NCBI RefSeq assembly: GCF_001194135.2
Contig: NC_068984.1
Coordinates: 138,358,271 to 138,391,957 of the forward strand
Source: Octopus bimaculoides
Taxonomy: Eukaryota
Reading direction: 5' to 3'
Length of the DNA stretch: 33,687 nucleotides
Each line of letters starts with the position of its first letter. The stretch's first letter is position 1. Positions 1,400-2,616 of this stretch are shown in pieces. The position numbers were made by a program, and so were the translations under genes. Under the pieces are notes generated by a model, which had not been told where the DNA came from, made no database searches, and saw nothing but the letters and a program-made list of their open reading frames with translations.

Positions 1400-2616
1400 C
1401 TTTCCGTATTCTAATTTGTTCCACTCTTTTCTACCACGAATTGCAATGCCTTTAATAAAACTATAATTTATCGCCATATCTATCTGAATGCACAGGTTAA
1501 CGTCCAAACATCGGCGTGAAGTAATATCGAATCTGGTTAGTTCTTAGATGGGTGATCGCTTGGGATATTCAAGAGCTGTAATCCACCGCTTTTAAATGAC
1601 AATGCTCCAGCAAAACCACAATCAAATGGCTGTAACATGTTAAAGAATATGAGGAAGTATAATGATTTGAAAACAATTTTAAAAGGACAAAAGAATTTGT
1701 GTACACATCTAAATTTTCTTCAAATATCATCTCAAAAATTTTTGATCCTAACAACTGCAGTTATCTATGTTTATAATCTGATATTAGATAGCATTCGTAA
1801 GTGGAATAAACGTACAATTTCCAAATTCTGGCCGAGAAATATTACATCAGGATTCGATTGTTGTCAAAGCGAATAGATTTGGATACAACTTCTAATTAAG
1901 TTTGAAAGACCCAGTTCTCTCCTTCCCCACTCCACAAGGATTTACAGACATTAATTTTCCAGAAGGACCTCACAACCTGTTCTATTTTAACAACACCAAG
2001 ATATACCATCCAGGAAACAGTCGTATATTTCATTTGCTTTACATATGAATGATTAACGGGCTCATAATCTCTTATGTCGATGACACAGATGTGCAATTGC
2101 TAAAACAGATGTGAGTTCGAGTTCCACCGGCAACCTTCAAATTTTTTCCAGCCAAATGGCATTTTTAACCAAATATTTACACGGTATCATTAATAGTTTT
2201 ATCTTCTTCGAGTTTCAGAGATAAAAACAGTTTATTTCATGTCTATCGAAATTTCTGAATTCATATGATGTGAACAACAAATATTATTATTTTCTAAGAT
2301 AAAATATACACCAGCCTTAATCTGTTTCTTATCTTCTACAATGCTCAATTAAAATTGACATCTGAAGAGAGCTTACATTTTTGAAACGGCGCGGCTGTTA
2401 GACACGAAAATAACTTAGACCTTATGAAAAGTGAGACTATTCCACTTTTAGACAGAAATCACCTACCCAACACACTTCAACCACACGTGCAGTTTCTTCT
2501 TCTGTTTCTTCAATCGCCACTACATTTATTCCAAATACACTGAATACGTTAAGCACAAACCAATTCCACTTTGGCCAACCGACATACTTTCTCGAATCAC
2601 CGTTACTGTCTTTCAT
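1400..2616 (-). mobile_element. Decayed piggyBac-like transposase remnant, interrupted by the 5S-derived element
   Basis: Broken minus frames give MVYLGVVK..RSFW..KSLWSGEG..VFQT..SIRFDN..IFEMIFEENL..Y, then IRGR beyond the insertion. These motifs are collinear with the piggyBac N-terminal half (LW...F..TMS..RF...RFDN...FE.F.EN..Y...DE...F.GR). No TIR recognised. Confidence 0.55.
1466..1684 (+). mobile_element. 5S rRNA-derived SINE-like element (SINE3-like), full-length head
   Basis: 1466-1583 aligns without gaps to a generic metazoan 5S rRNA (CTGGTTAGTTCTTAGATGGGTGATCGCTTGGGATATTCAAGAGCTGTA, 38/48 by eye). 1603-1649 matches the family-E/CR1 3' tail (38/47 vs 24046-24092). Second copy at 6420-6575. 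Confidence 0.75.

What the first reader, a model, noticed from the sequence alone, without database searches (positions are those of the whole stretch)
1466..1684. 5S rRNA-headed SINE (SINE3-like) carrying a CR1-type 3' tail
Seen: 1466-1583 is gaplessly collinear with a ~120-nt metazoan 5S rRNA, including the internal promoter region (box C-like TAGATGGGTG). A ~20-nt linker follows, then TGCTCCAGCAAAACCACAATCAAATGGCTGTAACATGTTAAAGAATA, which is 38/47 identical to the family-E SINE terminus (24046-24092) and similar to the end of the CR1 fragment (14965-15025). It appears to interrupt a piggyBac frame (..FEENL..Y | element | IRGR). Established: SINE3 elements (e.g. zebrafish) pair a 5S head with a CR1-derived tail, and they are far rarer than tRNA-SINEs. 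Inference: this is an old cephalopod SINE3 family mobilised by the same CR1 partner as family E. I am not aware of a description, but cannot check.
Basis: partly seen in the sequence, partly recalled or inferred. Interest (0 to 1): 0.85.

Follow-up and report, generated by a model that had tools for sequence, protein, structure and literature searches.

The report
Decayed 5S-rRNA-headed SINE, two copies
This is an old, mutated copy of a small "jumping" element whose front half is copied from 5S ribosomal RNA and whose back half resembles the tail of a CR1-type LINE; it is a rare but known kind of element, and only two copies could be examined.

Summary
The sequence observation holds. Window 1466-1584 is the only Rfam hit in the window: 5S_rRNA, full model, 39.1 bits against a gathering score of 38. 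Positions 1603-1649 are 38/47 identical to the tail of a SINE family that is abundant in the window (family E). That tail is in turn homologous to the 3' end of a CR1-like LINE fragment at 14964-15039.

A second copy lies on the minus strand at 6590-6420. It is 75% identical, and it is 5'-truncated or too decayed at its 5' end to tell. Its flanks are unrelated to those of copy 1, and both copies end at the same sharp 3' end (...CAATTTTAAAA). This pattern fits a retroposed 5S-derived SINE (SINE3 class).

- The CR1-type module is not the 3' terminus. Another 35 nt, specific to this family, follow it in both copies.
- No target-site duplications were found.
- The piggyBac interruption is unsupported.

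Copy number, Pol III activity and the host species could not be tested, because no eukaryotic genome collection was reachable. A 2026 Octopus vulgaris repeat annotation already lists four "5S" SINE families covering 9.8 Mb, and the giant squid genome paper reports about 24,000 5S-derived loci. I rate this a new member of a known kind, of modest interest.

The parts
1466..1584 (+). 5S rRNA-derived head of copy 1. It holds the remains of the type 1 internal promoter: box A-like 1514-1529, intermediate element-like TCTGGT 1532-1537, box C-like TAGATGGGTGATCGCTTGG 1545-1563.
   Evidence: Rfam RF00001, 39.1 bits, model 1-120. 65% identity to human 5S over 119 nt. Motif coordinates. Promoter box positions are from established Xenopus/human 5S numbering (my own knowledge).
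1585..1602 (+). Linker between head and tail module. It contains a T4 run (1590-1593) reminiscent of the 5S terminator. Copy 2 has only T3 here and lacks 7 nt.
   Evidence: Direct reading.
1603..1649 (+). LINE-type tail module, in sense orientation. It is homologous to the family E SINE tail and to the CR1-like 3' UTR end. Compared with these it has lost most of the two small hairpins through G-to-A changes.
   Evidence: 38/47 to 24046-24092. 34/47 to the family E consensus and 30/47 to the CR1 end. Alignment, folds, E-values.
1650..1684 (+). Terminal segment specific to this family (TGAGGAAGTATAATGATTTGAAAACAATTTTAAAA). Both copies share it. It is absent from family E and CR1 ends, and it ends with a T4 run followed by AAAA.
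   Evidence: Alignment of the two copies stops exactly after CAATTTTAAAA. nhmmer with this segment finds only the two copies.
6420..6590 (-). Copy 2 of the same element. The 5S part runs from about position 31 onward (box C-like 6541-6523). The tail module has an 11-nt deletion, and the 3' end is the same. It is either 5'-truncated or too decayed upstream to tell.
   Evidence: 74.9% over 171 nt. nhmmer E=6e-55, HMM positions 31-219. Upstream 50 nt are not significantly similar to copy 1 or to 5S (p=0.04 and 0.7). Not recognised as 5S by Rfam on its own at E<=10.
14383..15039 (+). Comparator: 3' fragment of a CR1-like LINE (C-terminal ORF plus 3' UTR). The UTR ends in two small hairpins and TAAAAGAA octamer repeats. 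This is the type of tail copied by family E and, in decayed form, by the 5S element.
   Evidence: ORF homologs include reverse transcriptase-bearing proteins. Its 3' end is 79.7% identical to a family E tail over 79 nt. Folds.
23865..24094 (+). Comparator: the best-preserved family E SINE copy. Its terminus (24046-24092) is the closest match to the 5S element's tail module.

Best explanation
1466-1684 is an old, inactive copy of a roughly 219-bp 5S rRNA-derived SINE (SINE3 class). 6590-6420 on the opposite strand is a second, shorter copy.

Inferred life cycle:
- A master copy was transcribed by RNA polymerase III from the 5S-type internal promoter (box A, intermediate element, box C).
- The RNA carried, downstream of the head, a copy of the 3' UTR end of a CR1-type LINE: two small hairpins and the start of the octamer repeats.
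- That module let the LINE's reverse transcriptase copy the RNA into new sites by target-primed reverse transcription. This gives a constant 3' end and a variable or truncated 5' end.

Likely origin: template switching from a family E SINE RNA, or a CR1 RNA, onto 5S rRNA, as proposed for HaSE3 in Helicoverpa.

Shown here: 5S homology; tail-module homology; two dispersed copies with unrelated flanks and a common 3' end.

Inferred only: Pol III transcription; the CR1 partner; family size; age. The JC distance between the two copies is about 0.31, so roughly 0.15 per copy.
For: - 5S homology: Rfam 5S_rRNA hit over the full model above the gathering score, the only such hit in the window. 65% identity to human 5S over 119 nt, which exceeds the SINEBase criterion of 60% over 60 nt.
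- Second copy at 75% identity. Similarity ends precisely at CAATTTTAAAA in both, and the flanks are unrelated on both sides.
- The 3' ends are well conserved (20/21 over the last 21 nt) while the 5' end of copy 2 is missing or decayed. That is the signature of retroposition.
- In 5S positions 45-121 the two copies share 27 differences from human 5S, against 10 private ones. This fits descent from one diverged master.
- The tail module is in sense orientation and significantly similar to family E tails (E=5e-07; E=6e-06). Family E tails match the CR1-like 3' end (E=6e-10; alignment).
- A precedent for a 5S SINE sharing its tail with a tRNA-type SINE and a LINE: HaSE3 (PMC3272025).
- 5S-class SINEs are abundant in cephalopod genomes: 4 families and 9.8 Mb in O. 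vulgaris; about 24,000 5S-derived loci in the giant squid.
Against: - Only two copies could be examined, so the family criterion (at least 100 copies) is untested.
- No target-site duplications longer than 5 nt.
- The CR1-type module is followed by 35 nt that match no LINE or SINE end in the window. The true 3' terminus is therefore not CR1-like and the partner LINE is uncertain.
- Copy 1 has a T4 run just after the head that would stop Pol III.
- The tail hairpins are not retained in either copy.
- The Rfam score is barely above threshold, and copy 2 is not recognised as 5S on its own.
- The host 5S gene was not available, so some of the 'shared derived' sites may simply be the host's 5S sequence.
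- The organism was not identified.
Confidence: 0.7

Rival explanations
1. A one-off chimeric retro-pseudogene. A LINE reverse transcriptase switched template from a family E SINE or CR1 RNA onto 5S rRNA once, and the product was later copied locally. It never became a proliferating SINE family.
For: Only two copies are seen, 4.7 kb apart. There are no target-site duplications. The internal T4 in copy 1 would hinder Pol III read-through. Template-switch chimeras with small RNAs are well documented (cited in PMC4758252 and PMC4824008).
Against: A local DNA duplication would normally carry flanking sequence. Here homology stops exactly at the element's 3' end, and the flanks are unrelated. The 25% divergence together with a clean shared 3' boundary fits two separate retropositions better. 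5S-class SINE families are abundant in cephalopods.
Confidence: 0.12
2. The two copies are the terminal inverted repeats of a DNA transposon or foldback element of about 5.1 kb spanning 1466-6590, with the heads pointing outward.
For: The copies are inverted with the 5S ends outward. Both outer ends can be read as starting with ATTTAT. A mariner-like ORF fragment lies between them at 5320-5601.
Against: Terminal inverted repeats are best conserved at their outer ends. Here the outer (head) ends are the worst-conserved or missing part, and the inner (tail) ends are sharp and conserved. The layout of 5S head plus sense LINE tail is explained by SINE structure. A heads-outward arrangement has about a 25% chance for two random insertions. 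No convincing target duplication was found.
Confidence: 0.05
3. A 5S rDNA orphon or pseudogene together with its native downstream spacer. The resemblance of the spacer to CR1 and SINE tails would then be secondary, for example an old SINE tail fragment in the spacer.
For: A T-run directly follows the 5S part, as at a 5S gene terminator. The 5S head is complete in copy 1.
Against: There is no tandem array: one Rfam hit in 33.7 kb and the two copies are inverted. The score of 39 bits is at the threshold, so this is not a functional-looking gene. The downstream part is significantly homologous to a LINE/SINE tail in sense orientation.
Confidence: 0.05
4. [quoted passage not shown]
For: Such elements exist and carry 5S-like sequences (PMC10886601).
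Against: LTRs are direct repeats, and these copies are inverted. No primer-binding site or internal region was looked for or seen. The tail is LINE-like. Ajax is known only from nemerteans and Cassandra only from plants.
Confidence: 0.03

Closest known systems
HaSE3 and related lepidopteran SINE3 families (Helicoverpa armigera; PMC3272025, PMC10886601)
   Same: A 5S rRNA-derived head with the box A, intermediate element and box C region best conserved. The 3' part is shared with a co-resident tRNA-type SINE and with the 3' end of a LINE. Proposed origin is template switching from the tRNA-type SINE RNA to 5S rRNA. Target duplications are absent in some copies.
   Different: The partner LINE there is RTE-type with TGA repeats; here the module is CR1-type with octamer repeats. 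HaSE3 shares body and tail at 94% with HaSE1. Here only about 47 nt are shared, at 72-81%, and an extra 35-nt terminus of unknown origin follows.
Zebrafish SINE3 (Kapitonov and Jurka 2003, Mol Biol Evol 20:694; cited)
   Same: A 5S head as Pol III promoter combined with a tail related to CR1-like LINEs (from my own knowledge of that paper). Old copies are dispersed.
   Different: Zebrafish SINE3 belongs to the DeuSINE superfamily, with a long central Deu domain (PMC4824008). The element here has only about 100 nt after the head, with no room for the ~330-bp vertebrate Deu domain. Sequence relatedness was not tested.
'5S' SINE families of the Octopus vulgaris repeat library (PMC13282606) and the ~24,000 5S-derived loci of Architeuthis dux (PMC6962438)
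   Same: 5S-classified SINEs in cephalopod genomes: 4 families and 9.83 Mb in O. vulgaris, one of them recently active. That density (0.35% of the genome) is the same order of magnitude as the 1.2% seen in this window.
   Different: Identity with this family could not be tested, and the window's species is unknown.
Family E SINE of this window and its CR1-like LINE (14383-15039)
   Same: The same tail module: GTGCTCCAGCATGGCCGCAGTC(C/A)AATGACTGAAAC... followed by TAAAAGA-type repeats.
   Different: Family E has a different, non-5S head and a body. It ends in the octamer repeats, whereas the 5S element continues for 35 nt more.

Membership tests
SINE (SINEBase definition, PMC3531059) | Short (<1 kb), interspersed, non-tandem repeat | tested here: met
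   A 219-bp unit. Two dispersed, inverted copies with unrelated flanks and no tandem array.
SINE (SINEBase definition, PMC3531059) | [quoted passage not shown] | not testable with these tools
   No eukaryotic genome collection was reachable. Only 2 copies in 33.7 kb. Searches of protein, viral, metagenome and prokaryote collections found no further copy.
SINE (SINEBase definition, PMC3531059) | At least 60% identity to 5S rRNA (or tRNA or 7SL RNA) over at least 60 nt | tested here: met
Rfam RF00001 above the gathering score.
SINE (SINEBase definition, PMC3531059) | Distinguished from an RNA pseudogene by extra body or tail sequence shared among copies | tested here: met
   Both copies share about 100 nt of non-5S sequence 3' of the head, up to a common end.
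SINE3 class (5S-derived, Pol III type 1 promoter) | Transcription by RNA polymerase III from the internal 5S promoter | not testable with these tools
   Only motif remnants are seen: box C 14/18 and intermediate element 5/6 against human 5S. There are no expression data.
LINE-mobilised (stringent-type) SINE with CR1 partner | The 3' terminus of the SINE is shared with the 3' terminus of the partner LINE | tested here: inconclusive
   The module 1603-1649 is homologous to family E and CR1 ends. It lies 35 nt inside the element, and the actual terminus 1650-1684 matches no LINE end in the window.
Retroposed element | Target-site duplications flanking the copy | tested here: not met
   No direct repeat longer than 5 nt at either copy. 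This is weak evidence: CR1-type insertions often lack them, the copies are old and the flanks are AT-rich.
DeuSINE superfamily (includes zebrafish SINE3-1 and AmnSINE1) | Central Deu domain | not tested
   No Deu consensus was available. Only about 100 nt follow the head, and about 47 of these are the LINE-type module, so a full ~330-bp Deu domain cannot be present (lengths from PMC4824008).
Functional 5S rRNA gene or 5S rDNA array | High-scoring 5S with intact helices, in tandem repeats | tested here: not met
   39.1 bits is just above the gathering score of 38, with many non-canonical pairs. There is a single hit in the window and no tandem copies.
   phmmer of minus-strand frames of 1250-1465 and 1685-3000 against all PDB chains found no hit at E<=1. 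The two quoted peptides lie in different frames although the insert is 219 nt, a multiple of 3. The test is weak for a very decayed transposase.

The most novel reading that the evidence does not exclude
The element represents a cephalopod-specific 5S SINE family whose CR1-type recognition module has become internal, because the family acquired a new 3' terminus (1650-1684, ending in a Pol III terminator-like T4 plus AAAA). That would mean a tail switch to a second, unidentified LINE partner, or a master gene whose read-through flank became part of the family. It would give a traceable example of partner switching in an invertebrate SINE3.
Probability: 0.2. Interest if true: 0.45.

Novelty: new member of a known kind. 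Interest (0 to 1): 0.3.

Why it matters
5S-derived SINEs are much rarer than tRNA-derived ones and have arisen independently several times. A characterised cephalopod family would add a molluscan origin. It would also help explain the very large numbers of 5S-like loci reported in squid and octopus genomes, and could serve as a phylogenetic insertion marker. In practice it matters for annotation: such copies pass the Rfam 5S threshold and inflate 5S rRNA gene counts. It does not open a new mechanism.

Tried and rejected
**Getting more copies**
- The look-up of encoding contigs with the window's CR1 ORF: not on record.
- Homologs of that ORF were at most 57% identical, all from ENA or Logan. 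The one long contig fetched (L001) shares no DNA with the window.
- Homology search with a concatenated six-frame translation of both copies: 5373 candidates, none at E<=1.
- Junction pattern GCTGTAATCCACC-N(0-30)-TGCTCCAGCA: 0 hits in viral contigs. The 3 hits in metagenome contigs are chance matches in GC-rich bacterial DNA.
- Head pattern: 0 hits in prokaryote genomes and 1 chance 21-mer in a viral contig.
- Homologs of the mariner ORF were about 70% identical. The fetched contig L005 shares only the mariner.
- The species therefore stayed unidentified, and copy number, consensus and orthologous empty sites could not be obtained.

**piggyBac**
- Three PDB sequence searches with the flanking frames were negative.

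**Copy 2 as a full-length copy**
- The 50 nt upstream of 6590 are not significantly similar to copy 1 or to 5S. Rfam does not call 5S there. The relaxed Rfam scan returned only microsatellite-driven miRNA false positives.

**Target-site duplications**
- None found.

**Terminal 35 nt**
- A 9-mer (GAAGTATAA) shared with the flank of one family E copy was judged to be chance.

**Literature**
- Word searches for four family E and two 5S-element sequence strings: no paper.
- Albertin 2015 and Walker & Doolittle 1983 are not held.
- No mention of 5S SINEs in the bivalve TE survey.

Full report
**1. The observation**

A gathering-threshold Rfam scan of the whole window gives one hit. It is RF00001 5S_rRNA at 1466-1584 on the plus strand, covering model positions 1-120, at 39.1 bits against a gathering score of 38 and E=8e-05. 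The alignment has three single-base indels and many non-canonical pairs. This is therefore a decayed 5S-derived sequence, not a working gene.

The 3' two-thirds, which hold the internal control region, are much better conserved. The box C-like TAGATGGGTGATCGCTTGG lies at 1545-1563, an intermediate element-like TCTGGT at 1532-1537, and a box A-like stretch at 1514-1529. The positions of these boxes come from established knowledge of the 5S promoter.

That similarity is significant within the window: BLASTN E=5e-07 and nhmmer E=6e-06.

**2. A second copy, and the ends of the element**

The window holds a second copy on the minus strand at 6590-6420. It is 74.9% identical over 171 nt, and nhmmer gives E=6e-55 over HMM positions 31-219.

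A pairwise alignment with flanks shows that similarity stops exactly after CAATTTTAAAA in both copies. The sequences beyond that point, and upstream of the heads, are unrelated.

Copy 2 lacks the first ~30 nt of the head or has lost them to decay. The 50 nt upstream of 6590 are not significantly similar to copy 1 (p=0.04) or to 5S (p=0.7). Rfam does not recognise copy 2 as 5S on its own at E<=10.

The last 21 nt are 20/21 identical between the copies, while the 5' end is the worst-preserved part. That is the pattern expected of LINE-mediated retroposition. It is the opposite of what terminal inverted repeats would show.

In 5S positions 45-121 the two copies share 27 differences from human 5S against 10 private differences. 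This fits descent from one diverged master. Without the host's own 5S gene, some of these shared sites may simply be species differences.

**3. The tail**

It also shows that the family's last ~80 nt are 79.7% identical (E=6e-10) to the 3' end of a CR1-like LINE fragment at 14964-15039. That fragment follows a C-terminal LINE ORF at 14383-14835, whose database relatives include reverse transcriptase-bearing proteins.

A multiple alignment of all these tails with the two 5S copies shows a common module: GTGCTCCAGCATGGCCGCAGTC(C/A)AATGACTGAAAC, followed by TAAAAGA-type octamer repeats. In family E and in the CR1 fragment this folds into two small hairpins.

Copy 1 of the 5S element matches the family E consensus at 34/47 and the CR1 fragment at 30/47. 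Most differences are G-to-A changes, and the hairpins are largely lost. Copy 2 has an 11-nt deletion in the module. The module is in the same sense as the head.

**4. A correction to the anatomy**

Family E copies and the CR1 fragment end in the octamer repeats. The 5S element does not. After the first octamer both copies continue with about 35 nt of shared sequence (1650-1684, TGAGGAAGTATAATGATTTGAAAACAATTTTAAAA). This segment matches nothing else in the window.

The real 3' terminus is thus not CR1-like. It ends in a T4 run, a possible Pol III terminator, followed by AAAA. Two origins seem possible: read-through of a master copy into its flank, or the tail of a second LINE. Two copies cannot decide between them.

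Copy 1 also has a T4 run right after the head (1590-1593) where copy 2 has T3. The master presumably lacked the terminator there.

No target-site duplication longer than 5 nt flanks either copy.

**5. The piggyBac claim**

I expect solved piggyBac transposases to be among those chains but did not check this. I treat the claim as unsupported. It was not needed for the main conclusion.

**6. Attempts to get more copies**

None of the reachable collections contains this genome.

- The window's CR1 ORF is not on record. Its best relatives are at most 57% identical, and the long contig fetched shares no DNA with the window.
- A six-frame peptide search with both copies found nothing.
- Pattern scans of viral, metagenome and prokaryote collections gave only chance matches.
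- A mariner ORF led to a metagenome contig that shares only the mariner.

Copy number, a consensus, orthologous empty sites and the species therefore remain untested. It is consistent with the SINE-rich, CR1- and mariner-bearing, AT-rich, gap-filled scaffold, but it is not shown.

**7. Explanation**

The best-supported reading (confidence 0.7) is an old SINE3-class element with four parts: 5S head, short linker, CR1-type recognition module, and a family-specific terminus.

By analogy it would be transcribed by Pol III from the 5S internal promoter and copied by a LINE reverse transcriptase through target-primed reverse transcription. The closest precedent is HaSE3 of Helicoverpa. That 5S SINE shares its 3' part with a tRNA-type SINE and a LINE, and is thought to have arisen by template switching onto 5S rRNA (PMC3272025).

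The rivals are less likely, for the reasons given in their entries:
- a one-off chimeric retro-pseudogene that was later duplicated;
- inverted ends of a 5.1-kb DNA element;
- a 5S rDNA orphon with its spacer;
- LTR fragments of a Cassandra- or Ajax-like element.

The JC distance between the copies is about 0.31, or 0.15 per copy. On the octopus calibration in PMC13282606 (0.2 corresponds to about 56 My) this would be roughly 40 My. That figure assumes an octopus host and simultaneous insertion, and it is only an inference.

**8. Novelty**

The searched literature contains no structural description of a cephalopod 5S SINE. The class, however, is not new there.

- The giant squid genome paper reports about 24,000 loci derived from 5S rRNA and suggests that many are SINEs (PMC6962438).
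- A 2026 curated repeat annotation of Octopus vulgaris lists a '5S' SINE class with four families covering 9,831,953 bp, one of them recently active (PMC13282606).
- SINE3 elements are known to have arisen several times (PMC10886601).

This is therefore a new, or at least not yet formally described, member of a known kind. Its one unexplained feature is the non-CR1 terminus. I score interest at 0.3.

Noticed in passing
23865-24094(+), 10704-10938(+), 12902-13027(+), 27707-27478(-), 32696-32909(+), 10190-10136(-), 26972-26920(-), 28385-28302(-): Family E SINE, eight copies or fragments in 33.7 kb. The tail consists of two small hairpins plus TAAAAGAA-type octamer repeats and is clearly copied from the CR1-like LINE 3' end at 14964-15039 (79.7% over 79 nt). 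ARAGORN calls no tRNA in the window, so the origin of the head was not established.
   Followed up: partly
750-868, 8041-8168, 9266-9485, 9490-9697, 17217-17335, 28564-28778, 30816-30946, 31010-31171, 33083-33290: A second abundant short repeat family with at least 9 copies, two of them in tandem at 9266-9697. Read on the appropriate strand it has a tRNA-like head (GGCGAGCTGGCAGAAACG...GAGTTCAAATTC). It shares a GGGGTCGAT / AAGTAC motif with family E, which may be a common central domain.
   Followed up: partly
25859-26105 vs 26386-26632; 16825-16958 vs 17790-17923; 16307-16375 vs 16386-16454: Duplicates 99% identical; the 25859/26386 pair brackets a run of N. They look like assembly artefacts of a gap-filled draft scaffold rather than biology. 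The window has several N gaps, for example around 13.9, 15.2, 19.1, 26.2 and 28.8-29.5 kb.
   Followed up: no
31863-32367(-) and 5320-5601(+): Two mariner-type transposase fragments. The first (HTH_48 domain) is 79% identical at DNA level over 477 nt to a 25.8-kb contig from a JGI metagenome (sample 3300002938) that shares nothing else with the window. This suggests either a widely shared or horizontally transferred mariner, or eukaryotic DNA in that metagenome.
   Followed up: partly
876-1226(-): ORF fragments resembling the C-terminus of a LINE protein, with a Cys/His motif (CPTCDRAFQTLIRWIGHSWTH). They lie next to a long ATT/AAT microsatellite at about 350-860.
   Followed up: no
6700-6900: A (TGTA/TATG)n microsatellite gives dozens of miRNA 'hits' in a relaxed Rfam scan (mir-3149, mir-297 and others, all far below their gathering scores). 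These are low-complexity false positives.
   Followed up: yes
13334-13459 vs 16262-16137; 16399-16592 vs 24307-24500: Two further repeat pairs at 90-92% identity, belonging to unclassified families that are younger than the 5S element.
   Followed up: no
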